From assembly GCF_021869535.1 (NCBI RefSeq), contig NW_026262581.1:115382001-115446000 (forward strand): 64,000 nucleotides of DNA, given 5' to 3'. A program made the translations under genes and the position numbers. The notes below the pieces were generated by a model. It was not told where the DNA came from, searched no databases, and saw only the letters and a program-made list of their open reading frames with translations. The DNA is from Mytilus californianus. Its lineage: Eukaryota. How positions within the stretch are numbered: the first letter of the stretch is position 1; each line of letters opens with the position of its first letter. Shown here in pieces: positions 18,001-58,970 of the stretch.

Positions 18001-20028
18001 ATGACTGCATAGGTCATGTGGGTTTTATGAAAACATTTGACTTTCATAGATAGTTTATGGTCAAAACTTTTCATGCATCAAAGGGCCCATACGCATAACA
18101 AAAGTTTGTTGAATTAAATTTTTCATTCTTTTCAAAATAAAAAAAATGGATTCAGATACGATACAGCACCCAAATATGGAAGAAAAGATGCAATGTACTG
18201 TTAAATCTGTAAGAGAAATATATACGATTCAAACAAAGGAACTTTATGCAAATTATGTGATATATATATAAAGAGAGAGGATTTCATTAAAATCAACCCA
18301 TCCAAAAAAAAAGATTATAAGCCAGCTTCATAAATTACATATGTCAGGAATCGGTTTTAGTCTTTGACTGTGGGCAACAATCCCTTTTATATCTGTTCTT
18401 TCTTAAACACATATCAAAAAGGGATTAAAATAGTGTATCTGTTAGAAACTTTGGTTTTAAATTGGTTTATCGATTGATTGTTTTTAACATCTTTTGAATT
18501 GTCTTAAATAGGTCCAGGGAGAGTTCTTGAATGCCAAAGAGAGGCTGATGCAAAAACTTCCGAGTTAAAGGACAAATTTATAGCCAAAGCTAATGCAGAT
18601 AATGTATGTACATATATTATGCTATGTATGCGTTTATATAAAACAAGTAGTTAACAGTTATCAGCATGTCACTGAAATGTATATATAGGATGAAAAATAT
18701 GCCAAACAACATAAATCTACTTTAAGCCAGAAAAGTCTTGGTACTAAATTATTCAAAAACTAATTACAGTACTTCTAGTAATCGAACGAAAAGAGTTTTT
18801 ATCAATAAGAAGCAATCAAGACAGATTAAATGAGAAGCTATTAAAGTAGGCTTGCCTATATATAGAAACATACGCTTAAAAGTACGAAGTAACGTGAAAT
18901 CGTAACAATTTCATTTTCTGCATTACACATTTCGATGTATATGGCCTCTTTCGTGATGCCTCAAGCCAAAATATTTGGATATTCGACACCCAACACAAAC
19001 TTCAGGAGTCATAACAACATAAAAGAACAAAAAGTGATAGAAATAATTAACTAGGGAAATGGAGTTGTACATATAATTGAAATGACCTATCAGAAAACAA
19101 TGGATTTATATTTTGTCACAGCAAAAACGATTGTAATAATCAGCATTTTCCACTTTTTATGCCATCACACAAGTATCATACGAATTCGGTACGTGACCAC
19201 ATTTTATTGCATAATAATGTCATGTGTCTTCTCCTTAAGGGTGCAAAAATGGTAGCATTGAGTAGAGATATAGATTGAAATAGCTGACTTTTAACGCAAA
19301 TATGTTAATTAAACTCTGATTTTTTTAAGAAGACATCGCGAGTTCATATACAAACGTTTTGTACATCATAATTTCAACAATTTTGTGTTGGACAATGACA
19401 ATAAACAATTAGAGCAAAGATTCCTCAGCATACATTTACCTGGAATATTTCTGTTTTTGTTGTTAAATATCTTTTGTCTTTCGTAGTCTGTTGCCACCAC
19501 TAACCATTTAGGCCTGATACCGTATGCTAACCTAGAACAAAACCTAACATAAACTTATAGCCATTACTGAACCCTATTTTCAAAGTAAAGTGATCCTTAA
19601 ATTAATAGAATGCTGAATTTTCTATATTATAATTTCCGCCAATTATGTGCTTTAATATAAAAGCGTGCCTACAAGTGCAAAGGGTGCATATCGATAAATC
19701 AAAATCGATATGACAAAATGTAAATCGACACCAATCTCGTTTTGGACATAGAATTCTATTTTTTTAAACGTATTTATGAAGTTATTATAATTATTATGAA
19801 TAGTTATCAGTTTTCTTTTAGGTTGAAGCTGAATTCTTCGTAGAATCGGCAGAAAAACCCGGCCACGCCATTTGCGAGTTTGCCCAGAAGCATGAGGCAA
19901 CATTTATTGTTACTGGAACTCGTGGAATGGGCAAACTCCGTAGAACACTACTTGGAAGTGTTAGTGACTTTGTTGTTCATCATTCCCATGTACCTGTTCT
20001 AGTATGTCGCCATACCAAAGATAAGTAA
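12029..20028 (+). CDS. Universal stress protein (UspA-like), 4 coding exons: join(12029..12086,17797..17880,18512..18603,19822..20028), 146 aa
   Basis: All four exons have GT-AG boundaries with matching phases (1,1,0). They total 441 nt from ATG to TAA. Translation: MAKVVMCLDGSQFAEDAYNWYVQNFHQAGNKVLFLHSPESYINATTMSPGRVLECQREADAKTSELKDKFIAKANADNVEAEFFVESAEKPGHAICEFAQKHEATFIVTGTRGMGKLRRTLLGSVSDFVVHHSHVPVLVCRHTKDK. It carries the USP hallmarks: N-terminal hydrophobic strand-D-GS, and G-TR-G-9x-GS...V.HH...PVLV. Confidence 0.96.
14301..15632 (+). mobile_element. Helentron-type non-autonomous element (HINE-like) in USP intron 1
   Basis: Starts in a T run. It has a 5' hairpin AGCTCACCTG-ACCT-GAA-AGGT-CAAGTGAGCT, a (CGTC/GTCC)n microsatellite, and internal ~500-bp tandem units (14417, 14919, deleted third at 15431). 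The 3' end has a subTIR GGTGAGC and the palindrome AGGCTCT-TT-AGAGCCT before a T run. Confidence 0.85.
17797..17880 (+). CDS. USP exon 2 (WYVQNFHQAGNKVLFLHSPESYINATTM)
   Basis: Acceptor TTTTGCAG; donor GTAAGT at 17881; phase 1 to 1. Confidence 0.93.
   Translation, partial: GMSRISTKPETKFCFYTVLKVTLMQLQ
18512..18603 (+). CDS. USP exon 3 (SPGRVLECQREADAKTSELKDKFIAKANADN)
   Basis: Acceptor TTAAATAG; donor GTATGT at 18604; phase 1 to 0. Confidence 0.92.
19822..20028 (+). CDS. USP exon 4 (VEAEFF...GTRGMGKLRRTLLGSVSDFVVHHSHVPVLVCRHTKDK*)
   Basis: Acceptor TTTTCTTTTAG; contains the USP signature; stop TAA at 20026-20028. Confidence 0.96.
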   Translation, partial: VEAEFFVESAEKPGHAICEFAQKHEATFIVTGTRGMGKLRRTLLGSVSDFVVHHSHVPVLVCRHTKDK

Positions 20029-33411: not shown

Positions 33412-33440
33412 ATGGAATCCAGCGTTGATGTCGTGGACAG
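33412..33440 (+). CDS. Roc-COR gene putative exon 1 (MESSVDVVD + AG)
   Basis: ATG in AAAATGG context; strong donor AG|GTAAGT; phase 2 fits the next exon. The frame is open upstream to a possible acceptor at 33336, so the true start could lie further 5'. Confidence 0.65.
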
Positions 33441-36400
33441 GTAAGTTATTTTGTTTGTATGATAATTATGACTAACAAATGGTCGAAGATGATGTAATCC
33501 AAGGAAAAAATGCTATGAATTGCTTTACTAATTAAAAAAAAACTTTGTTATAATCTTATTGTATGCAAATTATGTAAAGGTGACTGATGGATTATCTGTT
33601 ATATCGATATTACCCCCAACCCTTTTAATATTTCTTTACACCCTATAATGTAAAGCACAGTTTCATTGGTGAGTATATGGAAAAATTACGGAGACAAAAT
33701 ATCACCTCACATTCAAAAGTCAACACCAAAAATCATTTTGAGATGTAGAAAAACTTTAGTGGCGATATATTTTAGAATGATCATCAGAGGTTGTCGTCTG
33801 TCATATTTGTTTTTGGTTAATTATTTTGTTATAAATTTGGCCGTTAGTTTTCTCAGTTGAATTGTTCCATATTTTTTTCATGTCGGGGTCTTTTATAGCC
33901 GACTATACGGTATGGGATTTTCTCATTCTTGAGGGCCGAACGGTTGCCTATAAATGTTTACATCCACTTTATTTGAACTTTGTCCTCTTCTCCTTATTTC
34001 TTTATATATGGAAAAATTGCGTAGACGAAATATAACATCAAAAGTCAACACCTAAAATCACGACATATTTGAAGATCTACGCCAATAGACAGTTTGCAGT
34101 TTAATTGATAAAAACGATATTTACCTTAATAAACAAAATTCACTATGACAATGATCACTGTTTAAAAATTATTATTGTGCGTTTAAGAACAAACACTTAG
34201 AACGAAATGCCATATTCGCGTATTACATATTAAAATGAATATTAAACATGTTTAAATATGTCTTATTCGCACAGTTTGCAGGGTAAACTCTTTTGAAAAT
34301 TTCTGAGGGTAAAATAATATCTGCTACATATTATAAAGCTAGTTTAGAATTTTTTATCGAAATGTTGACATAATCTACTATTTCTTGCTGAAAGCATGTG
34401 TTTTTGCTATATTGCGTCATTATCTTGTTTTCTTAATTTTCTAAATGTAATAAAAGATGTATTATAAGAAAACAGAAAATGTGCCAAAACTTAATTCAAG
34501 GGAACAAACATATGCTGTCTAAGGCAAATGTTATTTCAAAGTTACATATTCCCACAACTGTATGATTAGAGATTTCGATTGATAGATGGATAGGTGTTTA
34601 ACGTCCAGTGGCAACTACGTCATGCCAATGTTATTATGTACACGAAAATTGCTTTGTATCTGACCGATACCACGGGTCGGATGTTTTACCTTGCTAGTTC
34701 ACATGATTAACATCTGCAGGAAGACATGTTCCTACCCGGATGAATTATTCTGACTCCGAAAAGATAAGTCTTTCCTCTTATTTCTAAATTTGGTGCAACT
34801 CAAAACCATAAGTCGAAGAAAAATAGACAACACTACCCCCCAAAACGATGAAAAACTAGACAACACTATGCCCCAAAACGATAAAAAAAAATAGACAACA
34901 CTATGCCCCAAAACGATGAAAAAACAAACAGCAGTTCAAAAAAATACACGACAAAGAAAACTGATGATTGAGCAATAAAAACGGTCAACTCAGGTACTCC
35001 AGATCCATTTCATTTGACACTCGCCGTGTTACTCTTGTAAAATGTAAAACATAACATACTTAAGTAAGTAAGTAATGACTTTATTTAAAGAGAGTGACTC
35101 AATTAGCATTCACTAATCTACCTTGAGGCCCTCACTAAGAACAAACAGTACAAAGCTTACAATTTTGAACATATTATGTAGATGCAATATTCACGCTAAC
35201 TATACATTGTCGTCTGTAGAACAAGAGAAAATTAAATTCATATATATATATACATAAAATACAAAATCATTAGAATATATGAGTGAGTTGTTATAAATCA
35301 TTTACAGTCAAGAAATCTACACATCGTTGTTTAAAAGTGTCCAGGATTTCACAACATTTTATTTCATTTGGTAGTTTATTCCAAAATATTGAGGAGCTAT
35401 ATGTGAAAGATTACTTCATTGAATTTGTGTTCGGTCGCACAACAGCTAAATTATCATTTGCAGATAACCTTAGATTTCTACTATGTAGGTTAACAATTGG
35501 ACAACAGAGATCACACGACAAAGAAAACTGATGATTGAGCAATAAAAACGGTCAACTCAGGTACTCCAGATCCATTTCATTTGACACTCGCCGTGTTACT
35601 CTTGTAAAATGTAAAACATAACATACTTAATTAAGTAATCAGGTGCTTTATCGTTGAGAATTTTATGAACAAGAATAAGTTTATGATATGAAATTTTAGA
35701 TTTGAAATTTAACCATAGCTCTTTGAATAAATTTTTACTAGGCATCAAGTAAAAACTTGCCTGACTCGTGTACTAATCTTGATGCAAACTTTCTCAGTCA
35801 AGTACAGCTCAAGTACAGCTCACAGCTTAGTAAATATGAAGCTAAATAGTACATTGCTTTGAAATGTATGCACTTTGACTCAATTTGTTTTTACTAATAT
35901 TAATTAAATTTAATGGCGTCAGCTGTTGGTTTTATTGTCACATATTGCAAGATTTTCGCGATAAATAAATAATAAATAATAAAATTTGGTACGCTATTTT
36001 TTCTTTTTTTTAATTCAGGTTGAATGTTTTCGTGTTTGGTGGAACATTTTCTGAAAGACAAGATTTAATCCGAGTAACCTTAAGTGAATACGATAAAGGT
36101 CATATAAGTACATCCTCCAACTCAAAGGACAAAAATGATACAACTGTGTTTGTTGATGAGGAGGTTGAAATTTATACATTACCTGGTAAGGATATTATCT
36201 ATTAGAAAACCATTATCATTTTACTTTATATCAAACTTGGCGGAGAAGGTCATTTCAAAGTAGTATTCCAATTTCCTCTTTTGATTACAAACCTTACCTT
36301 ATTATATTCAAAGGTCAAAATTCTCTCTTAATATAAAAATAACAAGATGTGGTATGATTGCCAATGAGACAACTTAACAATGAAATAAATATTTTATCTC

Positions 36401-39400
36401 TTAGTAATGACTACTTGCCTTAATCGCACATGAAATAATCAGATCTATTTTTTAACAGCTTCGCTGCGGTACATACTATTGCAGTTCGCATATATAAGAT
36501 AAGATTTAGAAGACAACAGCATGAGAATGGAGGCGGGAGTGCTTCAATGAGATAACAACTAATATTGTTAGGAAAGATATCTTTCCACCATAAAATAGAG
36601 TTATAATAGTCACTGCACGTGCCCCAACAATGACTGAATACCATTCATTAGCAGGAGCTCTAAATTATTTGGAAATTTTGGACAAAGAAATAAAAAAAAG
36701 GCGTGGTTTTCATTTCATTATACGTTTAAACAAATGATTGTCCCAATCGTGTACATAAGAAATGGTGTTTGTATGAAATCGAGAGAAAAAAATGCTGATA
36801 TTTGACTTTTTAACAAATTATAAAAAATATGAAAATGGGACAACCAAAATCTTAAGTGGAAGAAGGTTTTACAAAGCAAAGACTGAAAAGATAGTCTTCA
36901 TCAATCAGTTACACATTGAAATATTCATTAGGCTCATGAATATATATTTAATTATATGACATACTTACTTATAGAGATTTTTATTTCAGTTAGCAAAATA
37001 GCAAGTTGTGAAATCTGGAATTTTTCTGACAAAAAGGTATGCTTTTTAACTGGCATGTATGATTTATGTGTGAACTTTAATTTCTTTTCGTCTTAAATTT
37101 AATGGAAACATTTTTTCATTATGTGTTAATCATTTAGTAAAAAAAATATATACATTACCAAACCGTACATAACTCCTTCAGACATTGGTTACCTAAGCCC
37201 ATTTTTGTTGTCAATCTTTTAACGTCTTTTTTTTTTTTTTTGCTCCTTGTGCTTAGCATTCAATCGGCTTTTTTCGTTGTTGTTGGTCTCGACAGTATTT
37301 GAAAAATAACCAGCAAAACAAAAGCTTTCAATGCCGCAAGCAAAATATTTTTGATCATTGCTCAACTGTTTGTGTTTTCTTGAAGATGCATGATGTAATG
37401 AATTTTCTGCTGTATCAAGCAAACTATAGTAAATTTATTAACGAATCAGGATTGTTTTACTTCCTCAATAAGAGCCTCATCGTTATATGCGCATAAAGTA
37501 AAGAGACGACACTGAAAACTGAAACTTTTGTTGTAATATATTTTCTTAAAGAATTAAAAGGTAGGTGATGCGGAAATATAGGCACATCCAACTTAGAATC
37601 CGGCATATATTGCCTCGCCACGTACGAGTTCGGCACAAGAATGGGTAGATATGTGTGCCGTCATTTCGGAAACACGCACTGTAGAATGCCCATTTGGAAT
37701 AAAAATCTGACTGGAAAGTTTCAATTACAGCAACTTTACTTTTTTGCATGGTCTTGAATAGCGAACTCATTTTGAAATGCAAACAACTTACGATGATATG
37801 AAAGGAAAACTCACAATAAGAATACTGACTGTACCACATTTCTTAATTTCTTTTTGTTTTACCGTCTTTCATGCATTGCAGGACACGCTTACCCTCTCGA
37901 CGGTCTCGTTCCTTTTGGGGGTCATGTAATTCCCTGAGGTTTTGTTTGTTACCTTGATTTTTCTTCAAAATTGATTTATGATATTTGAATATGGGTAAAC
38001 ACAGTAGTTGTTGAATAAATAGGTTGTAGCTAGGTTATCGTAACTCTAATAGATCGCTTTAACTATCAATGAATCTAAAGCTGAAATTTTTATTAAAAAG
38101 CATTTTCCTTGTGACAATTTTCTGAAATATTAACAGTGGCGCTATCCCTCACCCACAAATATTGTTGCTTAAATATTTTATATATACCATATACTTTTCA
38201 ACCAAAATTTCGATGGGTCAGAAGTGTCGCCATATATGAGAAAATAAAATAAGGTAGAAAATGATGAAGAATTTCTAGAAAAATAGACTTAAATGAAATC
38301 ACTTTCTATTTCAATCTGATACTTGTACAATTTATGAAGCCGATATACAATTTTTCTTATTATACTTTGAAAAATGATACATTTTGTAATACATACACAG
38401 TAGATTTACTCAAACAATTGAAGTTTGAAAAATGCACCCTTACAGGGCCGTTTATTGGGGTTACTGGCTTTACTCTTTTATCAGCAGTGATTACGTAGGT
38501 TTGACAGGTTCGAATTCTGGCAAAACGTATTTCTAAAGAGTACTTTCTATTTTCATTTTATTTTTGTATTTTGTAACTAGATGCAATACCAGCTAACATA
38601 AATGAATAGAGCCAAACAGCTGTGATGGAAATTAATTAATTGATAAAACACTTTCTTTATAAACATGACGTATTATCACATTTAAAATCTTTGAAAAAGG
38701 AATATATTATGTTTTTTTCAATGATAAATGTTTTACAGCTAAGCCAAGGAATATCTCAACTATTTATAAACAAGTGTGCCATTGTTATCATCATCGTTGA
38801 TAATGCAGACTTTAAAGCAACGGAAAAGATTGCCAGACTATGGAGAAATTTTGCTTTCAAGGTATATTTTGACATGTGATGATCCGAGAACGATAACAAA
38901 ATGTTTAGGATTGATAATATACACTGTTATCACTATCATATTAGTTATTTTTTTAAGTTGAAATACATGCAAGAATGTTAGCAGCAAGGCAATAACTACA
39001 TTCGTATTCAAAAGTATATCATATGGACGAAAGGGGCGAAGAGTATACGACAGTGAGACTGTAACTCAACAAAACAATAAAACCTCAAAACAAATATACA
39101 TATCCACAATGTCAAACAGCTCTATGTACGAAATAATTAGTTGTCTTATGGGGAGCCATAAGACAACTATCTACCAAAGTGTAAATGAAGAGGGTATACG
39201 CAGTTATAGGCCACCATGCGGTCTTCGACAATGTGAAAAAAAAACCCATACCGTATTGTCGACTATAAAATGTCACGACATGAAAAATGTGATACAATAC
39301 TAATGAGAAAACCAATTGTATAATTTATAACAAAACAATTTACGAAAAACAAATATGACAGAAAATGAACCAACGACAACCACTATACCATATTTCAAAT

Positions 39401-42400
39401 TCTTAATCACCCTGAGGCTAGACAAATTGTAAACTAAGCAAACGTTTCAAAGTCAATAGTCCACGACTGAGGGGGCGTGGTCAAATTATCTCAAATTGAA
39501 ATGAGATGATCCAATGCTAATACAACTGCAAACCAAATATCATTGACCTACCACTAGTGGTTCCTCATAAACTGACCTAATCACAAACTAATACATTGGT
39601 GATGACGACGCCGTCGGAAACAGCATGCCTATGTCTCGTTTTTGACTCCGTCAAGGCGAGACAAAAAAAGTATTGCACCAAAAAATGCTTGCAGATGCCG
39701 AAAGCTTATACGCTGATATAGAAATTCGTCTAGTCTAATGCAGACGGCTGCACTTTCTAGTGAATTTCACACAGCAACGCAAGTGCCAATAGACACATGC
39801 AACGCCTGAGATGACCTTGTTTGATGAATTTTACTACAGATAAAAAAGGAAAAATAAAAAAGGAAACATTTTAGTCGCGTGACTGTGTGAAATGATTTTA
39901 GTACCAAAAAATACAGAAGATAAGTATAATGGTTACCTTTAAAACACAAGAAAAAAAACCAAAAGATTATGTTAAATGACGCGTTTTAACCTTTTTTACT
40001 TCCTTAGTTAAATAACCATAAAATGTTCAAACGTTGCTTGCATGCATGTATTATCTATAGTCATTGAAGTTCAATCGTAGTTTTTAAATTATTCTTTTGA
40101 CCGAGTGTGGATTCGTATGGCGGGTGATGCATGTATAGCAGGATACGCTTACCCTGTCGACACACCCGTTCTTGCTCCTTTAGGAGTTCATGTGATTCCC
40201 TCAGTTTTTGGTTTGTTACCTTAATTTGTATTCTAAGTCGATTTATGAGATAAATATCGTTGTTTTAAGTTAATATAAGATAAGAAAATGTGGTATAATT
40301 ACCAAGTTAATATTCTAGGAAATACCTTCATAAATCATAATAAATTTTTGACAGCAAAATAGATGGAAAAATAGTTAGAAAAGTTTTCTTGTTTATCCAG
40401 GGTATTCAACATGTTATTATAGCAAATATATCATCAATTGTAACGAGCGATGTCGTACAGCAGACAGTGCAGATCTTTGAAGCTCTTGATGAAAGTCTTA
40501 ACACATTCAAGCAAAGTCAATCCCAGTAAGTAAAGTTGTAGTTAATTTAATTTTTTATAAACTTCACATTTAAATTTTTCCTTATAGACCAAAACGTTTG
40601 TCAAATCAAACGGTGAAAATGTTATCATACTTTAAAAATTTGTTTAGATTAAACAGAAAACGGGACAAACATTAATGAAAAAGTAAAAATACAATGAAAA
40701 GCTTCAATTTTGTAAACCATCGATGCAAGTAAATTCTCTTACCCAAAACGTTGACTGGGTGCGGAATTTAAAATGTTTCCCAAGTACAGAGAATAAACAA
40801 GACTATATATGATAGAAACATCACTGACACATTCAGAAATAAAACTTTCGTTCAACACAACGCAGAAAACTAAGTCAAAAACAACACGAACCTCCGCTGA
40901 AAGAAAAGTTACGTGAAAGCTTTCAAAATGTACTAGTTGCATGTGAGACAAATACCATTAATGCAATATCAAGTATATAAGTGGGAGAGAAAAATTTCTT
41001 CACCACTCAAGTGAAAGATCAAGGACGCACGCAATGCATAACATTGATTTGTGTTTTATACTTGATTTTAGAGTTAAAGAAACTCCAAGAAATTACCACA
41101 AATTACATACTGCTGAAGAAAAGGTAGGTAAATTAAACATGCTTTACTCTCCAAAATCGAAAAAGGTCGATGTTATACGAAATATAAGGGAATGTATTGT
41201 ATTATATAAATCAATTCCACGTTATTATGATTGATTCAGTGAATTTTCATTTTCAATATGTCGTTGTCTCTTGACAACGCATTATAAACAGCAGATGAAA
41301 ATTAACATTGACAGATTAAGGTAAAAATAATGAAAAACGGGAAACGAAAATTATCGTATTGTACCGGAAATGAGCACATTTTGCATTTGATCGCTATATT
41401 AGTAGTGCATTCGTGTTTTTTTTTAAAAGTTCTGTCAAATGAATACGAGTTTTCTTTAAGCAATTAACAAATTTCCCAGCAATTCGCGCTTTTTCTTGAA
41501 TATACATGTAAAAAAATTTGTGTAAAATAAATACTCTCTAAGACGTACATCAAAACATTTGGTTTGATTTTCAACCTTCTAACAATGAGCCAAATTTGTA
41601 TGTTTATTTTAATAATGAAAAAAGACATACACACAGTATTTTGGTTCCTGTGCAGTCTCTTGGTTCCGAAAAGTGAAATACAATGGAACAATGAAACTTT
41701 TAATATATTCATGAAAACAAACTAATTTACATCCTCGTCACTTGGTCTCTGTTGGCTAGTAGTCTCATTGGCAAATCAAACCAATCTTCTTATATTTTTT
41801 ATATTTGTTGAACCTTCATATAAACATAGAAATCATGTGTATTGCTTACAGGACGCACTTCCCGCTCAAGATATATATAAATTTGTAAGATTACTAAAAT
41901 AAAAAATGACCAGAGTAAGTATTACATTTTGATACTTGAAATTGACATAAAAACACTAATAGATAATTACTACCAAAGAAACTGATTTCAATCTTTTACA
42001 GGGGTTTCTGACAATATTAACAACTCTTTTAAAAGAAGAAAAAGACAAAGTGATTACAGAAATAGACGATCTTACAAGAATAAAAAATACTGTACTCAAA
42101 CAAAGAAAGGATGTCGTGTTCAGTTCTATACATGAATATCAAAATATTGTGGCACTAGTGAACATTGGAAATACGTTGAACCATTTAACCGCAAAGGTAA
42201 TTGTTCCAAAAGTTTGGTATTTTCGTAATGTAATTGAAATATACGATGTGCAATAATATAAATAGGAATAATTCTGGTAACACCAACCTAATAGTCCGCG
42301 CTGGTGTGGCGGTCATTTTCTGTATATTCAGCGTTCATGTAAAAATCTTTCAAAATACTTATAATAAAAGTTTTTTTCAGGCGTTGATGAACACAATATT

Positions 42401-45400
42401 TGGCACACATTTTTTTATGTTTAAGGTCGTTGAGGTTTTTAATGCTCTTCAACCTTGTAATTACTTCCTCCTTCCTGCTACTGAATTAAACTTATCATCG
42501 GGGTTGTACTTACTTCAGCAACACGACGGGTGTCACATGTGGAGCAGGATATGCTTACCCATTCTGGAGCACATGAGATCACCGCCGGTGTTTGGCGGGG
42601 GTTCGTATTGCTCAGTCTTTAGTTTTTTTTTCTTGTGTTTTGTATACTGCTGTTTTTCTTTAGGTCTGTTTTGTTTTTTGCCATGGCGTTGTCAGTTTAT
42701 TTTCGACTTATGAGTTTGTATGTTCCTTTGGTATCTTTCGCTTCTCTTTTTAATCTATGTTTGATGCGAGCGCCACTGATGGGTCCTGTGTATACAAAAA
42801 CACCGTCTGGCTTACTTTATTACTGTATAAAAATGTATCTTTGGTAACTTTTTTTCATTTAGGTCAATCAAAATGCTAGATGTTTGGAATGATATACAAG
42901 CTTTACAAAACTAGAAAAATTAGACATTTCTTTTCCAATCACATTTTGGTCTGTTTAGAGTTATTAACACTGATATATCATTTTAGGGAATAATACTCAG
43001 TCATGGATGTTACCATCACGGAGGTGAATTCATCTGCGTGAATCCGCAGCTGTTTCTTAAACTTGTCTATGCTATTCATGTTGACAGCTGTAACAAGACA
43101 TTTCATATTGCACCAAACAGATTCTGGCATCAAGACAGACCAGACAGGGAATCTTTGGTCAAAGTTTTAGAAGACATTCCAATTAATGGATTACTTCGAC
43201 AATGTCTATTACCACTACTATGGCAGGTAGTTTTTTACGATATCTTTCTTAAATTGTATTAGTACTACGTGTAACTTCGGGTATATTATTTATCACAATA
43301 ACAAACTGTACGAAACGTCAATTATTATCGGCTTAATCTATCAATGTGCTTATAGTAGGCGGTAATGATTTTAAATTTTTTTATATTTTTTTTATTTAAT
43401 AAGAATTTCTGTTCTTCATAAATACAATGAGAAAACATACCTTTTCAGCGGGTAGTTTTACACTTGTTATAAAATGAAAAGAAACAACACTTTATACATT
43501 GTATGCGTCCGAAGCTTTTGTAATAATGCGAAAGGTGTTGAATTCTATTTACAGGACTTGTTGTCTAATAAAGAACAAATTCTACTGGTATCTACTGAGA
43601 TGGAAAGATTTGGCCTTCTGATGCCCTATAAAAAGATGTCCATGTTTAGTGATGTAATCAGTTTAATGGATTATCCCCAATTGTCATCAGTCGACCAAAT
43701 GTCTCTCTTATTGATGGGGAAAATGAAAGACTTAAAACCGGTAACTTTTAGTAGATCGTATTATATGTTCTAACAATCAATAGGTATGGGAAAAAGTAAT
43801 TTTCCGAGGGCACTATCCGCCCAGTAACCAAATCATATTTTGTGAAAATTGTCATTTTATAATGGCGGGTGATGCAATCATAGCAGTAGACGCTTACTCT
43901 GTCGACGTACACTGTCTCGCGCTTTTTGAAGTTCATGCGATTCCCTCAGTTTCTGTTTGTTGTTTTGATTTGTCTCTGTCTAATCGATTTACGAGATTTG
44001 AACATCGGTAAACTACTGTAACTTATATTTATCAATTACGAGTTGGTGGAGAACTAAGAATTGTGACAAAAGAGATTATTACAATTTTACTGTTGTGAAC
44101 TCTCCATTTCTGTGCAGCAACGTTCCATCAGCGCCTGCATATGGATTATATCTCTTTCACTTGATACGATATTCAAGGGCTTGCGTTTACTATGATGATT
44201 CCTTCATATAGGGTTACTGCTTGCATCAAGTTTCAAATGGTAAAGTAGAAGTCATTCCTTCGATAATTTATCAGACGCAAACATGATTTGGTTAACCATT
44301 AAAAGTAATATCCTTTTCACAGATGACCACGGATATGTTCCACTTGTTGTAACCACAATTCCGTCCTCTTTTCCTTGGTTGTGACATTACCCAATGCTAC
44401 TTATCATCGTTTTTTTCTCCCTGAAACGAGTAACATGACAGTAGCCACTAGTAGAGCAGTAACTGCTCACCCTTCCGAAGCACCTGAGTTCACCCCCGGG
44501 TTTTAGTGGGGTTCATGTTGCTCACTCTTTAGTTTTATATGTAGTGCTTTGTTGTTGCTGTTTGTCTTGTCGGCGTTTTTTGTTATCGGAGTGGTTTTTG
44601 TTTCTAATTATGATTTTTGATTGGCCCTTGGTATTTCATCTCATTTTAAATGCAAGTGTACTAAACGTATAATTGCAATCCCTTTCAGTCAAAGTTGCCA
44701 TAAGCCGGTTTTGACTGTTCTGTTTAGGTCTTTTAGTTTTTGCTCTAAAAATAATTATAAATTATGATAATTTATTTAACAATATATAACATTAATCGAT
44801 CTTTTTGCAAATAATGACCATCATGTGAGCTGTGCACACCTAAAGTCACGTAATAAATAAAACAGTTGATATATAATATTCATTTTACAGTCCTTAAACT
44901 GGTATGAAGACCTACAGACATCTGATATACAACTGAACCTGAAAGTATCATTTCCTCAGGGATTACCACCAGGATGTTTAGAAAGATATATTGGTGCTGT
45001 ATATTTTGTTTATAAATATGTAAATAATTACTATTATGGATGGAGGTCTGGCATATTACTACGTATTAATGATGTAAGTTTTACCGAAAAGTAATTCTGA
45101 TATGAGATGACATTAGATGACCATGAGCCTTTTCTTGATGAAATGGAATAATCTAATTACAATCATATACGCTGCTGAATGTGATACACCTAAAGACATT
45201 AAAACGACTAAAATACTGTCGAATTTTACCTAGTCCTTTTTGATACATGTGTAAATATACATTTTGAAGGACTTTATATTTTTCTATTTTATATTTTCTG
45301 AAAGCGATTTGTAAGACGATGGTGTTAAAATGAAACGCCAAAATGTATATATAATTCTTTTTTTTATTTTAAGATTATAATTTATAAAATTACAAAAGTA

Positions 45401-48400
45401 AGCGTTCGATATTCATCTATTTCATAATCCATTTTTATCAACAATTCGTGAAGCATTAACAATTTTTTGTCGATAAATGTACAATAGTTGTTATTTATTA
45501 GGAAATGTACTAAGATTGTGTGCGAGTTGAGGATTGAAGACATATACTCGTTTGTGGATAGGTATGAAAAACTGTCGTTTTGTGTCAGTTTGAAAGTTGA
45601 CTGTTTAAAAAATAATGAAAAATGTTAATACTTGAATGAGCATGTATGATAATTGGAGTTAATTCCTTTCAGCAATGTAGAACGAGTTTCAGACTGAAGA
45701 AATAACCCCTCATTTTTTTAGTTGGTCATTTTACGTTTTTATGAAACCTTTTCTGAATTGTTGACTAATTTAGGTATCAGTTAAGTTTCTAGATCACACA
45801 AAATACACCAGGTAAATACTTTAGCAAATTGGATTAAATTACACTCAATGATGTGGGGTGATGTTCTTCTAGTGTTGTGTTCAACTGTTTTGGTTCTTAA
45901 ACATCCTTGGCTTTCAAATATTCGGCTTTAAGCGTACCTGATGAAGGAAAAGCTCTTCGGACGCATAAAACTTAAACGTGTTGTTTTGATTTTTTCGAAC
46001 GTAAAATACCGATTTCTGTGCGCATGAAATGTGTTTCTGTTAAAATCTTCTGTGTGTACGATGGAGAAAGTTCATGAAGCCAAAAAACAACAAAAAAAAT
46101 TAAAAAAAAAATTACGTTTTAGAGCATTAAAATCATACTGCTCTAAACAGTCAAAACATGATGTAGCTACAAGTAACAATGCCTTAGGTATTTGTAACAC
46201 TTAGAAAATGTATCATTCAATCAAGCAATACTTTACATTACCCACACACTGGACCCTGGACAGAATGGTAACCTCGGAACTGAAAGTTCGGCTGCAGCAT
46301 TACCTCACGGTTGTATTCGATCGAAACGTATGATTACGATTTCGGGTCAACAGAACGGTCAGTACCAAAAGTTTGGGAATCCAAATGTATAAAACGTCTG
46401 AAAACATAAAAAACTAGAAGGCTTTAAAAGAACAGCCAAACTGTATTAGGTCTACTTTTCTAAGGATTTTGCAACATTTTGTAAGCACAATTAAAACACT
46501 TTTTACCGGGACGAACAGATTCTGATCATGATGCAATATCAATATGAACCTTTATGTATAAACTATACCGATTCTCTGAGCCAGATTTTGAAAATAGGAA
46601 ATTTACAGACAAAAACAAATCATCAAAGATACCAGGCTTATAAATTTAAACGTCACACGCGCGTTTCGTCTATAAAATACTCATTAGTGAAGCTCTAATA
46701 AAAAAAGTTTAAAGGCCAAATAAAACACGAAATGATGTTAAAGTTACCAACTGTAGGCGTTCTAGAATGAGCAGAATCAATACCGTATAGCAAGCTATGA
46801 AATGCCCCGAAATGAAAACGAGAAAACTAACGGCCTGATTTATGTACAAAACAATAAACGAAATACAAATATGATATACAGCAACAAACGACATCCCTGA
46901 ATTACAGGCTCCTAAATTGGGACAGGTACTTACAGAATGTGGCGGGATGAAACATGTTTCGGGGGGGGGGGGGCAATTCTCTAACCTTAGACAGAGTTGT
47001 CAGCCAAAATGGTCCTAGCTTGTAAACCAAATTAAATCTTATCCGTACGTCTACGTTGGGTGGCTTTCCTTTGATCTTTAATTCATATCCTTTTTATTTA
47101 CTTTCAGGTTTATATCTATATATCAACACAGAATGAGTCTTTAGAGTATTTTGTCCGAACAGATATTGATTTATATCCTAGTTTTGAAGAAGCATGTAAA
47201 AAACTTTGGATGACTGTTGGTTTAGCACTGGATTGTTTTTTAAATCACGTTTCAATTTGGCCAGAACTTAATTATCAGGTAACAAATTAGATAAACGTTA
47301 TAGCAAGTTTGATGGATTTATATACTTACCAACATTAAATGATTAATATTCCTTTCTTCATTCATAAGTTCGTTTTGGGCGGCTAGGCATTTGCGGTATT
47401 TAGCAAAATCATTACTTCAAGATGCAGCAAATATTAAATAATTTGAGATATTTATTATGCATATTAATTCTATAACACTAGACATGTTTCATTATTTACC
47501 AAGAGGGGTTTCCATAATCAATAAAGGTAAGTTTTGAAATATTCGTCTGATATGTACGTAAATCCTCAGATTATTACTTTCGTTTTCACAAAAAAAAGTC
47601 AAAGAAAATGTTACAATCTACCGTTATGTATATATATATAAATAAGAAGATGTGGTATGATTGTCAATGAGACAACTTTCCACAAGAGACCAAATGACAC
47701 AGAAATTGACAACTATAGGTCACCGTACGGCCTTCAGCAATGAGTAAAACCCATACCGCATAGTCAGCTATAAAAGGCCCCGAAATGACAAATGTAAAAT
47801 ATTTCAAACGAGAAAACTAACGGCCTGATTTAAGTACAAAATAATGAACGAAAAATAAATATGATATACAGCAACAAACGACAACCTCTAAATTACAGGC
47901 TTCTGTCTTGGGACAGGCACATACAGAATGTGGTGGGGTAAAATTAGTTTGAAGGAGCCAACCCTCCCCTAACCTGGGACAGTGGTGTAACATTACAACA
48001 TAAGAACAAACTGTAAAAATCAGTTGAAAAGGGCTTGACTAATCAGATGGACACAAAGCAGAAATACATCTAACAAAAACACAGAGTGAACGTGGCAGGG
48101 TACTTATACATCACCACAACAAAAAGACATTGAGTACAGATCTGAGAGTACTCGCAGTTACTGACAGCTAGTTCAAAGCCAATAACAACTAATAAAAAAA
48201 TCATGCATCTAAGACTAAAATATCAATCAGTACACATCCAACATCCAATGGATTTAGTGTAAATACGTCATTAACAGTCAGAGAAAAAAACATGACCTTG
48301 TAAAATGCCAAGATACAGGTATCGACAGATTGTAGAGCCATGCATGTGCATATGTATATAAAAATACTATTTAGTTTGATTTTAATTTACTGATAACAAA

Positions 48401-51400
48401 ATCAATATTAATACCAATAAAAACAATATTCAAAGATCTAATTATAGTGTTGAATTGGTAACCTTTTAGAATAAGTTTATTTAAAGAATCGATAAGTTTA
48501 CATAGTTGCTTTTCATAAACTTGGTAAAAGGGATAGTTTTACATTTTTGTCCTCGGAAATTAGCAACAGAATTAGCCAAAAAGATCCTCATTCGCTTAAG
48601 ACATCTTGTTCCAAAATATATTTTTGGAAAGGCTGTAAGTCATATTCAAATATCAGTGTTAAGGTCTTAAAAGAAAATAATTTTGTAGTTTTTGAAAATT
48701 GTTCCATAATTGCAGAAAGCTTTAGTACCAAAATCATGAATTTTACTGACATCAGACAGAATAATATCTTGTGAAAATGGAAATAATGCTTTTAGTAGAT
48801 TAATAATACTTTTTCATTTTAAAAATCAAGTCGCCTTAATACCATCTCAGTACGAGTTCACAAATTAACTACTTAATAGACAGAACATAAACATTACCTC
48901 AGCTCATTGTTTAGCCTGGGTTAGAATATGACAAGGATTCGTATGTATAAAAATTTTTAAATTTGGAATATTTTTCGTCAGGTAGATTTGTTACAAAAAC
49001 GTGTCTAGTAAATATTAGAAAGTTGATTAACAACTTTCGTCATTTTTTCATATTTTTATTTAATTTGAATTAATTTGAAGGTATACCTGTCTGCTGATGG
49101 AGAACAATTTCGATCAAGCAGTGTAATTGGTGCATGTTCCTTGCCCTCCATGTTGACAAAAAGATACAATAGGAAAGATAACACGGAAGAAGAATTAGAA
49201 ACGAAGGTTAAATTATTGTTTCCATTTCAAGGTAATAATGTAATAATCTTCATCTTTTATTAACTTTAGATTAAACGCGAAAAATACTATGTGTGGGAAA
49301 ATAATAAGATGTCAACTCATGTATTTGTTTGTAAAAAAAATGTCTGCTAGCAAATTAAGATGTCAAAACTGCTCATTTGTACAACTAGTAAATTATATCT
49401 AAAATATATATTTGAAGTCTACGCTTATATGTTTATAATATTGGCATTATGTTCGAGTGGCCAAGCTATACAAAGTCGCTTATCTACAGACGACTTTAAT
49501 TGCATTCCGTGCCAAGGTATTCAACTTTTGTGAATATGACTTCGTACGGAAAGATGGTTCGGTCTGCCAGAGTCGATTCAGAATAGTTTTTGCTTGCCCG
49601 ATACTTGGTACAAAAGATCATTATAATAAGTGTCGTACCTTTTTTAACTCCAATATGTTTCGAAACGTAGCAGAAAAAAATAAGAAGAAATACAGCAAGT
49701 TCTTCCTTAACTTTTTTGTAATGGGAAAGACATTAATGACCCTAATAAATTTACATGCATGGTTAAAATCATTTTCACAGGCTAACGTTTTTTGCCAAAT
49801 CCAGTCAACTTAAACATTCAAATCACAGATAATCACATGCAGAATAAACCGACATGTCTTTGTAAAAAAAAACCGGAAAATCTCAAACTCAAATGACACA
49901 TCATAAAATAAGGTAACAGTAGTTTTAAGACAAATTAAGTTATCAAACACAAACTGAGGGAATCGCATGAACTCCAAAAGAAGCGAGACTGGGCCCGGTG
50001 CGTCGACAGGATCCGCATCTCATGCTATGCATGCATCACCCGGTCTGATAATTCAAAATATCACAATCGGGAATAGGACAGAATCGGTAAAATTGCAGGT
50101 CAGACGACATTTTGCGAAAACATGTAGCTAGCAGGTTGAGATGAACCTATTTGTGATGATTTCAGTCGTTTTTCCTTATAACTTGGTTTCTGTAGTTTTT
50201 ATAGCATACTCCTGCTAATGAAGTCCGAACAGTGTAAACATGCAAATCAGTTGAGATGTGTAATTGCCACATGGGACAGAGGTTAAGTAACTGCTGATAA
50301 ATGGGAAGTTGACGATTGGAAAATTGAAATATTATGTTGTCATAGATTCTAGTTTGAGGTCGCCCATCTCTGTCAATATCGAGGAAAAGATCAAGATATG
50401 ACGTTCACTGGGAAATATGAGATACACTCACTTACTAAAACGTGGATTATTGAGTGACAGGTCATCATCAAAATATCTGAATGTGAAATTAAAGAACTTT
50501 GCAAGATGTGTTCTCTTGTTTATTTTTGAGAAGGTTTTATTATTTATTATTTATTTATGCATTTCTCTGTGCTGAGCGTTCTTGCGTTTGTTTGTAATGT
50601 ATTCCTGTCACGTAGTGTTGTCATTTTAGCGATATTTTTTAACATTGCCATATAAGCGGAAGGTTTGGCTAGCCATAAAACCAGGTTCAACCAGTCATTT
50701 TTTCCTAAAATGTCCTGTACCAAGTCAGGAATATGGCAGTTGTTATCAAATAGTCCGTTTCTATGTATGTTGGCCTTGGTTTTTGTTGCAGTTCAGTGTT
50801 TCTGTTGTTCCGTTGTTTTCCTTTTATAGTTGATGTGTTTCCCTCGGTTTTAGTTTGTAACCCGGATTTGTTTTCTCTTAATCGATTTAGGACTTTTGAA
50901 CAGCGGTATACTACTGTTGCCTTTATTTGTATGAATTCTGCTTCATATGAGTGCATAAACAAGTCGGAATTTTTTGGAATCAGTGCAGTTCTTCACAAAG
51001 TAAGATTTTGTCACAATCTACAGGACGAAATTGTATCTACGAACCCCATTTTTGTAGAAAAAATGCTCTGTTTAAAGAGACGAAGTATTCAATTTTTCAT
51101 TTGAACATTGGGAATAATAGTGTACAGCGTAGAAAATCAAAAATGATATTACTGCAAAATTGTAAAGATTGTTACTGAAGATTTTACGGTAGATCTTTAG
51201 AATTTTGAAGAATCCAGATCTGATTGACGCCGCATGTTGAATATAATACCCCATCACAATATTTTAGGAAGCTATCTTTAATTGTCAAAATAACAGCGGT
51301 AAGAACTTTTGAAAGATGTTTAGTCAAACATTTCGACGAGCCGATTATATATCGTTCTTTATAAAGATTTTTGTGAAGTTTAGATATCACGTATTAAAGA

Positions 51401-57325: not shown

Positions 57326-58339
57326 AATCATAAGTAGTGGTAACTACAAGAACAGCGAGCAAAGCTTACATAATAATACCACACATTCTTGTAAAGCCCC
57401 TTATTTTCTAAAAAACAAAACAAAAAATAATTTCGATCAATTAACAAAATAAGAGGTGCACAATAGCATTATATGAAAATAAGGAGATGTGTATATTGTG
57501 GTATGTTTGAATATGGTGTTTACAACTGTCACCGTACGGCCTTAAACAATGAGCAGACCCATACCGAATATGCTATCAAAGGACGCAACTTGACAAAATA
57601 TAAAAAAAAAAATAGAAAACCAACGGACTGATTAGAATTTAGATTTGGAGACAGTTTCAATAAATTCTAATAAGGTTTTTAGGAGGAGTAGCGGATACAA
57701 AATGAGTAATCCCGATAAAGCATGTGAAATCCATTATTTGCATAGAGAAACCCTAAAAAAAATGGATTTACAAAATAGGAGGGGACGAATATTGATAAGG
57801 GATTAAGAAAGAATTGCGAATATAAAATGGGCACACAAAATAATTTTTTTTTTCAAAATGATTCCCAAACGTCCCTTGCATAGACTGAGTTGCTAAAGGA
57901 AAAAACCTAAATTTAATTCAAATAAAAATTATGAGTCCCACAATTGCATTGTATAGGAAATATTATGAAAATGTTTCATTGAATTCTTACTAGGGGTTTA
58001 TTGGAGAGAAGTTGGTGCAACTGTGAACTAACATATGCAGATCTGACAAAGTCAATGTCATTTTAAGGTTAAAATTATTCGGAATAAGAAATGAAATACG
58101 AGGTCATTACGTGGGTCAGATTCTGTAAATGTTAACAAAATTCACTCAAGAGATTCTATGGAAGTTGCAGATACAAAAAGATATTATCCTCTTATTCAAC
58201 TTTTTTCTGTAAAAACACACACATAATCAATTAAAATTAATAACATGGAGTTTTTCAAGTTTCACTATTTTAGATATAAGTGCTTATGACCAATTCAATT
58301 TCTGTCCCGGTCAATGAATTGAAGTTTTACTATCTTTAT

Positions 58340-58970
58340 AAAAATAACAAGATGTGGTATAATTGCCAACGAGACAACTCTCCACAAGAGACCAAATGAC
58401 ACAGGAATTAACGACTATTGGTCACCGTATGGCGTTCAACAATGAGCCAAACCCATGTCGCCCAGTCAGCTATAAAAGTCCCCGAAATGACAAATGTAAA
58501 ACAATTCAAACGAGAAAACTGACGGAATAATTTATGTACAAAATAATGTACGAAAAAACAAATATGATACACAGAAACAAACGACAACCACTGAATTACA
58601 GGCTCCTGATTTGGGACAGGCACATATAGAATATGGCGGGGTTAAACATGATAGCGGGCGCCCAACCCTCCCCCATCACATGGGACAGTGGTGTAACAGT
58701 ACATCATAAGAACTAACTATAAAAATCAGTTGAAAAAGGCTTAACTCATCAGATTGATTACAAACAGTAATACATATAACAAAAAAGAGAGTGGACGTGA
58801 CAGGGTACTTATACATCCCCACAACAAAAAGACACTAAGTACAGATCTGAGAGTACTCGCAGTTACAGTTAAATATCAATCAGTACATATCCAACAGCCA
58901 ATTGAGTTAGTGTAAAGACGTCATTAACAGTCAGAGAAAAACATGACCTTGTGCAATGCCAAGATATGCA
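58340..58970 (+). mobile_element. Family A repeat copy
   Basis: Homologous to 47640-48310. Confidence 0.85.

What the first reader, a model, noticed from the sequence alone, without database searches (positions are those of the whole stretch)
36038..37030. All recognisable GTP-binding motifs are degenerate: a probable pseudo-GTPase Roc
Seen: G1 reads GGTFSERQ (36038-36061) where Roc has GxxxxGKT/S, so G>E, K>R and T>Q. G3 reads WNFSD (37016-37030) where Roc has WDFAG. The G4 position in exon 5 reads IIANISS, with no T/N-[HK]-x-D. The frame and splice sites remain intact, which argues for a functional protein rather than decay. Inference: a nucleotide-independent scaffold, or a dominant-negative partner that heterodimerises with active ROCO proteins through COR. 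Established: COR mediates ROCO dimerisation.
Basis: partly seen in the sequence, partly recalled or inferred. Interest (0 to 1): 0.75.

Follow-up and report, generated by a model that had tools for sequence, protein, structure and literature searches.

The report
Mussel Roc-COR protein with dead GTPase motifs
A mussel (Mytilus) gene encodes a membrane-anchored relative of the LRRK2/MFHAS1 "ROCO" proteins whose GTP-binding switch has lost every nucleotide-binding motif, yet the gene is spliced, expressed and kept by selection, so it is probably a natural GTP-independent ROCO protein.

Summary
G1 reads GGTFSERQ at 36038-36061, G3 reads WNFSD at 37016-37030, and the G4 position reads ANISS in the fifth exon.

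I rebuilt a 15-exon, 798-aa intact gene (33412-53808, + strand).

It is the single-copy Mytilus orthologue of an uncharacterised family found in molluscs, an annelid, a nemertean, echinoderms and a hemichordate. The family has Roc, COR-A, COR-B, a C-terminal helical cassette and a CaaX box.

Most non-Mytilus members checked keep canonical GxxxxGK[ST], WDxxGR and T[KH]xD and hit Pfam Roc. Three Mytilus lineages share the degenerate motifs.

AlphaFold models of Mytilus orthologues match solved Roc-COR structures best. The dead motifs sit at the beta1-alpha1 loop, the end of beta3 and the end of beta5.

dN/dS of the Roc exons is 0.36-0.38 (bootstrap 0.24-0.56), against 0.11-0.17 for COR. This is constraint, not decay.

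The best reading is a class-i-type pseudoGTPase Roc acting as a nucleotide-independent, prenylated scaffold.

The "dominant-negative partner of an active paralogue" idea is not supported, because the genome holds no second family member.

GTP binding was not measured. Apart from a note on this gene's C-terminus, the scan held no other finding on it.

The parts
33412..33440 (+). Coding exon 1: start codon, MESSVDVVD plus 2 bases. Only 10 residues precede beta1 of Roc, so there is no N-terminal LRR.
   Evidence: The same start is used in the M. edulis model P0001. The exon is conserved in L001 and L002 with a GT donor.
36019..36185 (+). Exon A: Roc beta1, pseudo-P-loop GGTFSERQ (36038-36061), alpha1, a low-complexity switch-I region and beta2.
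   Evidence: The A|B junction 36185>36990 is in RNA contigs of X1 and X2. The motif column is aligned.
36990..37036 (+). Exon B: Roc beta3 ending in the pseudo-G3 WNFSD (37016-37030).
38739..38861 (+). Exon C: switch-II helix, beta4 and alpha3 of Roc.
   Evidence: The B|C junction is in X1 and X2 contigs. The C|D junction is also supported by 8 stranded X6 reads.
40401..40525 (+). Exon D: beta5 with the pseudo-G4 A-N-I-S-S (N-I-S-S at 40425-40436), then alpha4.
41072..41123 (+).
   Evidence: The junction 40525>41072 (GT..AG) is in 4 X6 reads and in X2 and X7 contigs. Phase was checked.
42002..42196 (+). Exon E: last Roc helix and the linker into COR-A.
   Evidence: Splice logic and orthologue alignment. 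The RNA contigs run on past 41123, but this exon lay outside the stretch on which reads were laid.
42987..43740 (+). Exons F (42987-43226) and G (43555-43740): COR-A.
   Evidence: family found with exon F. (the model of M. edulis P0001 1-400 aligns over about 300-400 columns with solved Roc-COR structures)..
44891..49231 (+). Exons H (44891-45073), I (47108-47278) and J (49081-49231): COR-B.
   Evidence: weak Pfam COR-B hit, E 0.096. (the model of M. galloprovincialis P0044 150-490 matches the CtRoco COR domain 3dpt over 293 columns, plus LRRK1 and LRRK2)..
52368..53808 (+). Exons K (52368-52522), L (52829-53179) and M (53587-53805, plus the stop codon): linker, a conserved hydrophobic helix (..GSFVATILATAVAAY..), a second helix, a Cys cluster and the CaaX box CTLL.
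   Evidence: A CaaX box ends every full-length family member checked: CVIA, CVIL, CVLL, CSVF, CRLL, CTIM, CNIM, CSLL and CIIL.

Best explanation
The window carries the only Mytilus copy of an uncharacterised ROCO-type gene. Its product runs Roc, COR-A, COR-B, a helical cassette and a CaaX box.

Most non-Mytilus members checked have a canonical Roc GTPase. In the Mytilus lineage the Roc domain kept its Ras-like fold and its COR partner but lost the residues that hold the phosphates and Mg (P-loop second Gly>Glu/Asp, Lys>Arg, Ser/Thr>Gln; G3 Asp>Asn, Gly>Asp). It also lost those that read the guanine base (G4 Lys and Asp).

It most likely no longer binds or hydrolyses GTP. That would make it a class-i-type pseudoGTPase. 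It would then work as a nucleotide-independent structural module of a geranylgeranylated, membrane-bound Roc-COR scaffold.

Shown here: gene structure, expression and splicing, orthology, motif loss, fold, and purifying selection.

Inferred: absence of nucleotide binding, prenylation, and the scaffold role. By analogy with CtRoco, which is dimeric when nucleotide-free and monomeric with GTP (PMC6337361), the protein may be locked in a dimer-competent state. That too is inferred.
For: - Exons and junctions are seen in RNA, with the strandedness expected of a + strand transcript.
- A 15-exon, 798-aa open frame uses only GT-AG introns. The same 15 exons give an open 798-aa frame in M. galloprovincialis. 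Splice sites are conserved in M. edulis, M. trossulus and M. coruscus for every exon found in those loci.
- Exon F finds only 40 relatives among 1.84 billion representatives. Named members come from five gastropod genera, Owenia, Tubulanus, three echinoderm genera and Saccoglossus.
- Seven of the non-Mytilus members hit Pfam Roc at 1e-9 to 2e-16, above the cut-off. Patella, which is also degenerate, hits only weakly (E 0.025, below the cut-off). Elysia and the partial Saccoglossus model give no Roc hit, and neither does the Mytilus protein.
- An HMM built from the non-Mytilus Roc domains scores the window's residues 1-200 at 33.0 bits. The best of 2000 shuffles scored 12.0.
- The family profile hits LRRK2 Roc best in the PDB (2.5e-19), then the archaeal and bacterial Roco proteins (about 1e-15), and Rab proteins only at 1e-11.
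- AF2 models: the first 26 Foldseek hits of the Roc-COR-A model are all solved Roco, LRRK1 or LRRK2 chains. For the COR model the first 36 are, including the CtRoco COR domain over 293 columns.
- In the model the three dead motifs lie at the beta1-alpha1 loop, the end of beta3 and the end of beta5.
- Motif table: Mytilus has GGTFS[ED]RQ, WNFSD and N[ILV]S[SQ]. The family has GxxxxGK[ST], WDxxGR and T[KH]xD.
- dN/dS (NG86): Roc exons 0.36-0.38 (bootstrap 0.24-0.56), the G1-G3 exons 0.20-0.24, COR 0.11-0.17, at dS about 0.31-0.34.
Against: - No binding or hydrolysis measurement exists. Motif loss predicts, but does not prove, loss of nucleotide binding.
- The AF2 models are of moderate confidence (mean pLDDT 62 and 70). 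They were made from the M. edulis and M. galloprovincialis orthologues, not from the window's own protein. Beta6 and the G5 region are not modelled confidently.
- Selection on Roc is clearly weaker than on COR.
- RNA depth is low (about 1-4x in the part of the runs that was read).
- RefSeq-type models of three sister species start downstream of the Roc exons, so shorter isoforms without Roc may also exist.
- The homodimer fold test gave no verdict.
Confidence: 0.75

Rival explanations
1. The Roc domain still binds a nucleotide in a non-canonical way. It might bind GTP or ATP through the P-loop Arg and other residues. That would make it a binding-competent but hydrolysis-dead pseudoGTPase (class ii-like), or an atypical switch.
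For: The beta1-loop-alpha1 geometry and both leading glycines of the P-loop are retained. The pseudo-motifs are themselves nearly invariant among Mytilus species, and the G1-G3 exons have the lowest dN/dS of the Roc part (0.20-0.24). That would fit a conserved ligand site as well as a structural role.
Against: G1, G3 and G4 are all lost together. An acidic residue (Glu or Asp) replaces the second P-loop glycine, where phosphate would sit. No NKxD-like base-recognition residues remain.
Confidence: 0.12
2. The gene, or at least its Roc exons, is decaying. It would be a transcribed pseudogene or a relic 5' part that is no longer translated.
For: dN/dS in Roc (about 0.37) is three times that of COR. 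Annotation pipelines gave N-terminally truncated models in M. galloprovincialis, M. trossulus and M. coruscus. The M. edulis assembly has a 1-base deletion in exon H. About 60 residues after G4 that are present in other phyla are missing.
Against: The frame is open, and all 28 splice sites are canonical. They are conserved across lineages separated by dS of about 0.3. The bootstrap upper bound of dN/dS is 0.56, below 1. One RNA contig joins exons A-B-C-D.
Confidence: 0.06
3. The protein would be a dominant-negative partner that heterodimerises through COR with active ROCO proteins of the species.
For: COR-B mediates dimerisation in CtRoco and LRRK2 (PMC6337361). The genome encodes more than 150 COR-A-bearing open frames.
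Against: There is no second member of this family in the genome. The other COR-A genes are so distant that the window's exons do not match Pfam COR-A, and the family profile does not match them. Nothing suggests cross-family COR pairing.
Confidence: 0.05

Closest known systems
MFHAS1/MASL1 (LRR-Roc-COR, the simplest animal ROCO)
   Same: It has a Roc-COR tandem with no kinase. The sea-urchin, annelid and nemertean members of this family carry N-terminal LRRs like MFHAS1. NCBI names the starfish member 'MFHAS1-like'.
   Different: - The molluscan members, including this one, start directly at Roc with no LRR.
- Every full-length member ends in a conserved helical cassette plus CaaX. I do not know such a cassette from MFHAS1; that rests on memory and was not tested.
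- Orthology to MFHAS1 was not tested.
- The literature states that only deuterostomes have MFHAS1 (PMC4104024).
- The Mytilus Roc has no G motifs.
LRRK2, LRRK1 and prokaryotic Roco (CtRoco, M. barkeri Roco2) Roc-COR modules
   Same: They are the best sequence-profile and structure matches for both Roc and COR, with the same domain order Roc, COR-A, COR-B.
   Different: - Identity is only 10-15%.
- There is no kinase, ankyrin or WD40 domain.
- Those proteins bind and hydrolyse GTP through intact G1-G4 motifs, which are absent here.
Class i pseudoGTPases (AAGAB psGD, p190RhoGAP pG1/pG2, CENP-M)
   Same: They have a Ras-like fold with the G-motif residues absent, and they serve as protein-interaction modules. 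[quoted passage not shown]
   Different: - Those are unrelated G-domain lineages.
- Here the dead domain is a Roc still coupled to COR, and active orthologues exist in other phyla.
- Class membership needs a binding assay, which was not done.

Membership tests
ROCO proteins | A Roc (Ras-like G) domain homologous to Pfam PF08477 | tested here: met
   The Mytilus protein itself gives no Pfam Roc hit. Seven non-Mytilus members do, at 1e-9 to 2e-16 and above the cut-off. The window's residues 1-200 score 33 bits against the non-Mytilus family's Roc HMM, while the best of 2000 shuffles scored 12. The family profile hits LRRK2 Roc at 2.5e-19. The AF2 model has Ras-like topology.
ROCO proteins | A COR domain (COR-A plus COR-B) directly after Roc | tested here: met
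   By sequence the support is weak only: Pfam COR-B at E 0.096 on exon H, and 4e-5 for the starfish member, which is below the cut-off. There is no COR-A hit, and the COR profile finds nothing in the PDB by sequence. By structure the support is clear. The Roc-COR-A model aligns over about 300-400 columns with MbRoco2, LRRK1, LRRK2 and CtRoco. The COR model matches the CtRoco COR domain 3dpt over 293 of 299 residues at E 2.7e-6, and its top 36 hits are all ROCO proteins. The models are of moderate confidence and were made from sister-species orthologues.
ROCO proteins | Intact G1-G4 motifs, meaning a GTP-binding Roc | tested here: not met
   G1 is GGTFSERQ, G3 is WNFSD and G4 is ANISS. No Walker A, DxxG or [NT][KH]xD occurs in the whole protein. 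Actual GTP binding cannot be tested here.
Class i pseudoGTPase | A GTPase fold retained | tested here: met
   The AF2 secondary-structure order runs b1-a1-b2-b3-a2-b4-a3-b5-a4..a5. Foldseek matches to Roc, Rab and Ras have probability 1.00. pLDDT is moderate, and beta6 is not modelled.
Class i pseudoGTPase | No nucleotide binding and no hydrolysis | not testable with these tools
   This is predicted from loss of all G motifs. It needs biochemistry.
CaaX-prenylated proteins | A C-terminal Cys-aliphatic-aliphatic-X box | tested here: met
   The product ends in CTLL. Every full-length family member checked ends in a CaaX box. Prenylation itself was not tested.

The most novel reading that the evidence does not exclude
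A previously unrecognised, CaaX-anchored ROCO subfamily of lophotrochozoans and ambulacrarians has lost its GTP-binding motifs repeatedly and independently while staying under selection. The loss is complete in Mytilus and nearly complete in Patella. Elysia has lost G4, and G1 is also absent from its possibly truncated model. Tubulanus has lost G4 and Antedon has lost G3. If this holds, the core job of this Roc-COR module is nucleotide-independent, and Mytilus offers a natural 'GTPase-dead' ROCO for separating scaffold functions from switch functions.
Probability: 0.35. Interest if true: 0.6.

Novelty: new variant of a known kind. Interest (0 to 1): 0.5.

Why it matters
How far ROCO proteins such as LRRK2 depend on the Roc GTPase cycle, as opposed to Roc-COR acting as a structural and dimerising scaffold, is still debated (PMC6337361).

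A search of the held paper library for 'pseudoGTPase' together with 'LRRK2' found only one unrelated review. I therefore found no described natural ROCO with a dead Roc, although the library is incomplete.

This case pairs active orthologues in gastropods and echinoderms with a constrained, expressed dead version in mussels. That is a ready-made comparison for asking what a Roc-COR module does without GTP.

It also brings to light an unnamed ROCO subfamily with a conserved C-terminal helical cassette and prenylation box.

Tried and rejected
- **Pfam on single exons.** Only a weak COR-B hit came up. Exon-sized queries are too short, so I switched to orthologues.
- **Own-genome Pfam COR-A and COR-B searches.** There are more than 150 COR-A open frames elsewhere and none in the window. 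This shows a large, unrelated ROCO expansion, not paralogues of this gene.
- **Word search with P0001.** It returned only four Mytilus proteins and no other bivalve.
- **Naming short fragment hits.** The Logan and ENA fragments carry no names. I could not date the loss within bivalves beyond 'before the split of the window's lineage from the M. edulis complex'.
- **M. coruscus locus L004.** Its 10 kb upstream of exon H does not contain exons A to G. I did not resolve whether this is an assembly problem or a structural difference.
- **M. trossulus locus L003.** It starts downstream of exons A and B, so that species adds nothing for G1 and G3.
- **COR profile against PDB sequences.** Nothing was found. 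COR is recognisable here only by structure.
- **Complex prediction on two copies of the COR region.** The result was no answer (score 0.00), which is evidence neither for nor against dimerisation.
- **An intact P-loop elsewhere or in an alternative exon.** None was found.
- **Folding the window's own spliced protein.** I did not fold it. A spliced sequence has no reference, and I did not type it in. Sister-species proteins P0001 and P0044 were used instead.
Full report
**What is in the sequence.**
The window is AT-rich eukaryotic DNA with about 32% GC. It comes from contig C1 of a 1.65-Gb, 175-contig assembly.

After an AG at 36017-18, exon A (36019-36185) reads LNVFVF-GGTFSERQ-DLIRVTL, with the octapeptide at 36038-36061. 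Exon B (36990-37036) ends ...CEI-WNFSD-KK, with WNFSD at 37016-37030. Exon D (40401-40525) reads GIQHVII-ANISS.

**Expression and splicing.**
I laid one raw stranded RNA-seq run (X6) and three contig sets (X1, X2, X7) on 36010-42009. The runs come from two studies. They showed GT..AG joints at these positions:
- 36185>36990
- 37036>38739
- 38861>40401
- 40525>41072

One X1 contig joins exons A-B-C-D. The C|D joint has 8 X6 reads and the D|D' joint has 4. All of these have the first mate on the minus strand, as expected for a + strand mRNA in a standard stranded library.

Depth is low, at about 1-4x in the roughly 6% of X6 that was read.

**Gene model.**
I combined the RNA joints, splice logic and tblastn of sister-species proteins. 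This gave 15 coding exons from 33412 (ATG) to 53808 (stop). All introns are GT-AG, and the open frame is 798 aa.

Only ten residues precede beta1 of the G domain.

**Relatives.**
The gene is single-copy. Exons A and F, and a profile of the family's COR region, match only this locus in the whole genome.

A full HMMER scan of 1.84 billion representatives with exon F found only 40 proteins. The closest are Mytilus proteins:
- M. edulis P0001, 91% identity over exon F
- M. galloprovincialis P0044
- M. trossulus P0045
- M. coruscus P0046

The window's exons are 94-97% identical in DNA to the M. coruscus locus. They are about 80-93% identical to the other three species. So the window is a Mytilus species of the coruscus lineage. 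From memory, which I did not test, a 1.65-Gb assembly in 175 scaffolds fits M. californianus.

More distant named members come from these taxa:
- gastropods: Haliotis, Babylonia, Batillaria, Elysia and Patella
- the annelid Owenia
- the nemertean Tubulanus
- echinoderms: Acanthaster, Lytechinus and Antedon
- the hemichordate Saccoglossus

**Is it Roc-COR?**
The Mytilus proteins give no significant Pfam hit. Seven non-Mytilus members hit Pfam Roc at 1e-9 to 2e-16, above the gathering score. The Patella, Elysia and partial Saccoglossus models do not. Some members hit COR-B weakly.

An HMM built only from non-Mytilus Roc domains scores the window's first 200 residues at 33.0 bits. The best of 2000 shuffles scored 12.0.

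The family profile's best PDB matches are LRRK2 Roc (2.5e-19), then M. barkeri and C. tepidum Roco (about 1e-15). These come ahead of the Rab proteins at 1e-11.

The AlphaFold2 model of M. edulis residues 1-400 has mean pLDDT 62 and pTM 0.64. It has the Ras-like order of strands and helices. Its first 26 Foldseek hits in the PDB are all Roc-COR structures, aligned over about 300-400 columns.

The model of the COR region of M. galloprovincialis has mean pLDDT 70. It matches LRRK1, the isolated CtRoco COR domain (293 columns) and LRRK2 in its first 36 hits.

The protein is therefore a ROCO-type Roc, COR-A, COR-B protein. COR is recognisable only structurally.

**The motifs.**
In a MAFFT alignment the family reads as follows.

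| Motif | Family members with the motif intact | Mytilus (window, M. edulis, M. galloprovincialis) |
|---|---|---|
| G1 | G-x4-G-K-[ST] (Babylonia GSSMCGKT, Haliotis GDVGCGKT, Acanthaster GGTGSGKT, Owenia GDQNVGKT) | GGTFS[ED]RQ |
| G3 | W-D-x-x-G-R | WNFSD |
| G4 | T-[KH]-x-D | N-[ILV]-S-[SQ] |
| G5 | S-x4-G-K/Q-G | HTA-x-EKG |

In the AF2 model the three dead motifs lie in the beta1-alpha1 loop, at the end of beta3 and at the end of beta5.

No Walker A, DxxG or [NT][KH]xD exists anywhere in the product.

Degeneration is not unique to Mytilus:
- Patella reads GDCEEKKS, WNLKYK and AIEND.
- Elysia has lost G4, and its possibly truncated model also lacks G1.
- Tubulanus has lost G4.
- Antedon has lost G3.

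These are single gene models that I did not verify.

**Selection.**
I mapped all exons onto the four sister-species loci. Every exon found has AG/GT borders and an open frame. The one exception is a 1-base deletion in exon H of the draft M. edulis assembly. The same 15 exons give an open 798-aa product in M. galloprovincialis.

Nei-Gojobori estimates, window against M. galloprovincialis or M. edulis:

| Region | dS | dN/dS | Bootstrap 95% |
|---|---|---|---|
| Roc exons | 0.31-0.34 | 0.36-0.38 | 0.24-0.56 |
| G1-G3 exons alone | | 0.20-0.24 | |
| COR (includes the M. trossulus comparison) | | 0.11-0.17 | |
| C-terminal part | | 0.30-0.37 | |

The Roc domain is thus under purifying selection, but it is less tightly held than COR. 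The motif loss predates the split of the window's lineage from the M. edulis complex.

**Mechanism.**
Three things are shown. The gene is expressed and conserved. Its product is a Roc-COR protein. It has none of the residues that bind phosphate, Mg or the guanine base.

The rest is inferred. The domain probably does not bind GTP. That would make it a class i pseudoGTPase in the sense used in PMC12490416 and PMC5593906, acting as a fixed structural partner of COR.

The family-wide C-terminal cassette is a hydrophobic helix, a second helix and a CaaX box. Here the box is CTLL, which should direct geranylgeranylation. This predicts a membrane-anchored protein.

CtRoco is dimeric when nucleotide-free and monomeric with GTP (PMC6337361). 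A Roc that cannot load GTP may therefore hold the protein in a dimer-competent state. A fold test of the COR homodimer gave no verdict.

**Rivals.**
Non-canonical nucleotide binding cannot be excluded without an assay. Pseudogene decay is contradicted by the frames, the splice sites, dN/dS and the spliced RNA. The dominant-negative-partner idea lacks a partner, since no second family member exists in the genome.

**Comparison with the known.**
The closest named relative by architecture is MFHAS1 (LRR-Roc-COR). The sea-urchin, annelid and nemertean members carry LRRs, and the molluscan ones do not.

Reviews state that ROC-COR always sits in multidomain proteins, and that only deuterostomes have MFHAS1 (PMC4104024). 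Orthology to MFHAS1 was not tested here.

A search of the held library for 'pseudoGTPase' together with 'LRRK2' returned only one unrelated review.

**Verdict.**
It is a new variant of a known kind: a ROCO protein with a dead but conserved Roc, in an undescribed prenylated subfamily. Interest is moderate.

Noticed in passing
window 52368-53808; also the C-termini of P0009, P0010, P0012, P0020, P0026, P0033, P0039, P0040 and P0050: The C-terminal cassette is a hydrophobic helix ..[GS]FVA.ILA.AVA.., a second Ala-rich helix ..G[DN].[DE][GA]AA.AV.., a basic stretch and a CaaX box. It is conserved across molluscs, a nemertean, echinoderms and a hemichordate. It is therefore a family trait and not a Mytilus peculiarity. 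The Mytilus versions add a Cys cluster (CCLDGSLCYC) before CTLL.
   Followed up: partly
window 19822-20025 (+): This is the last exon of a different upstream gene. It is a universal stress protein (Usp) domain, Pfam PF00582 at E 1.6e-16.
   Followed up: partly
window 36331-36375 and 39240-39670 (introns A-B and C-D): Short intronic segments have RNA depth in the thousands. They carry many loose ends and 'goes back' joints. They look like pieces of highly expressed dispersed repeats and not parts of this gene. The 36340-36374 piece resembles a motif that recurs as ...IANETT... open frames elsewhere in the window, for example at 58323-58442.
   Followed up: no
G000 genome-wide: More than 150 COR-A matches lie in intronless open frames of about 400 aa. 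They cluster on contigs C2, C90, C154 and others. This is a large lineage-specific ROCO-like expansion that is unrelated to the window's gene.
   Followed up: no
L001:13568-13749 (M. edulis), L004:1-10000 (M. coruscus), L003:1-7787 (M. trossulus): M. edulis exon H has a 1-base deletion, which explains the odd public gene model P0001. The M. coruscus locus lacks exons A to G within 10 kb upstream of exon H. M. trossulus carries a separate 349-aa gene call over the upstream exons. Public models of this gene are fragmented in all four species.
   Followed up: partly
P0040 (Patella), P0012 (Elysia), P0033 (Tubulanus), P0017 (Antedon): Other family members show partial or full loss of G motifs independently of Mytilus. 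These are single gene models that I did not verify.
   Followed up: partly
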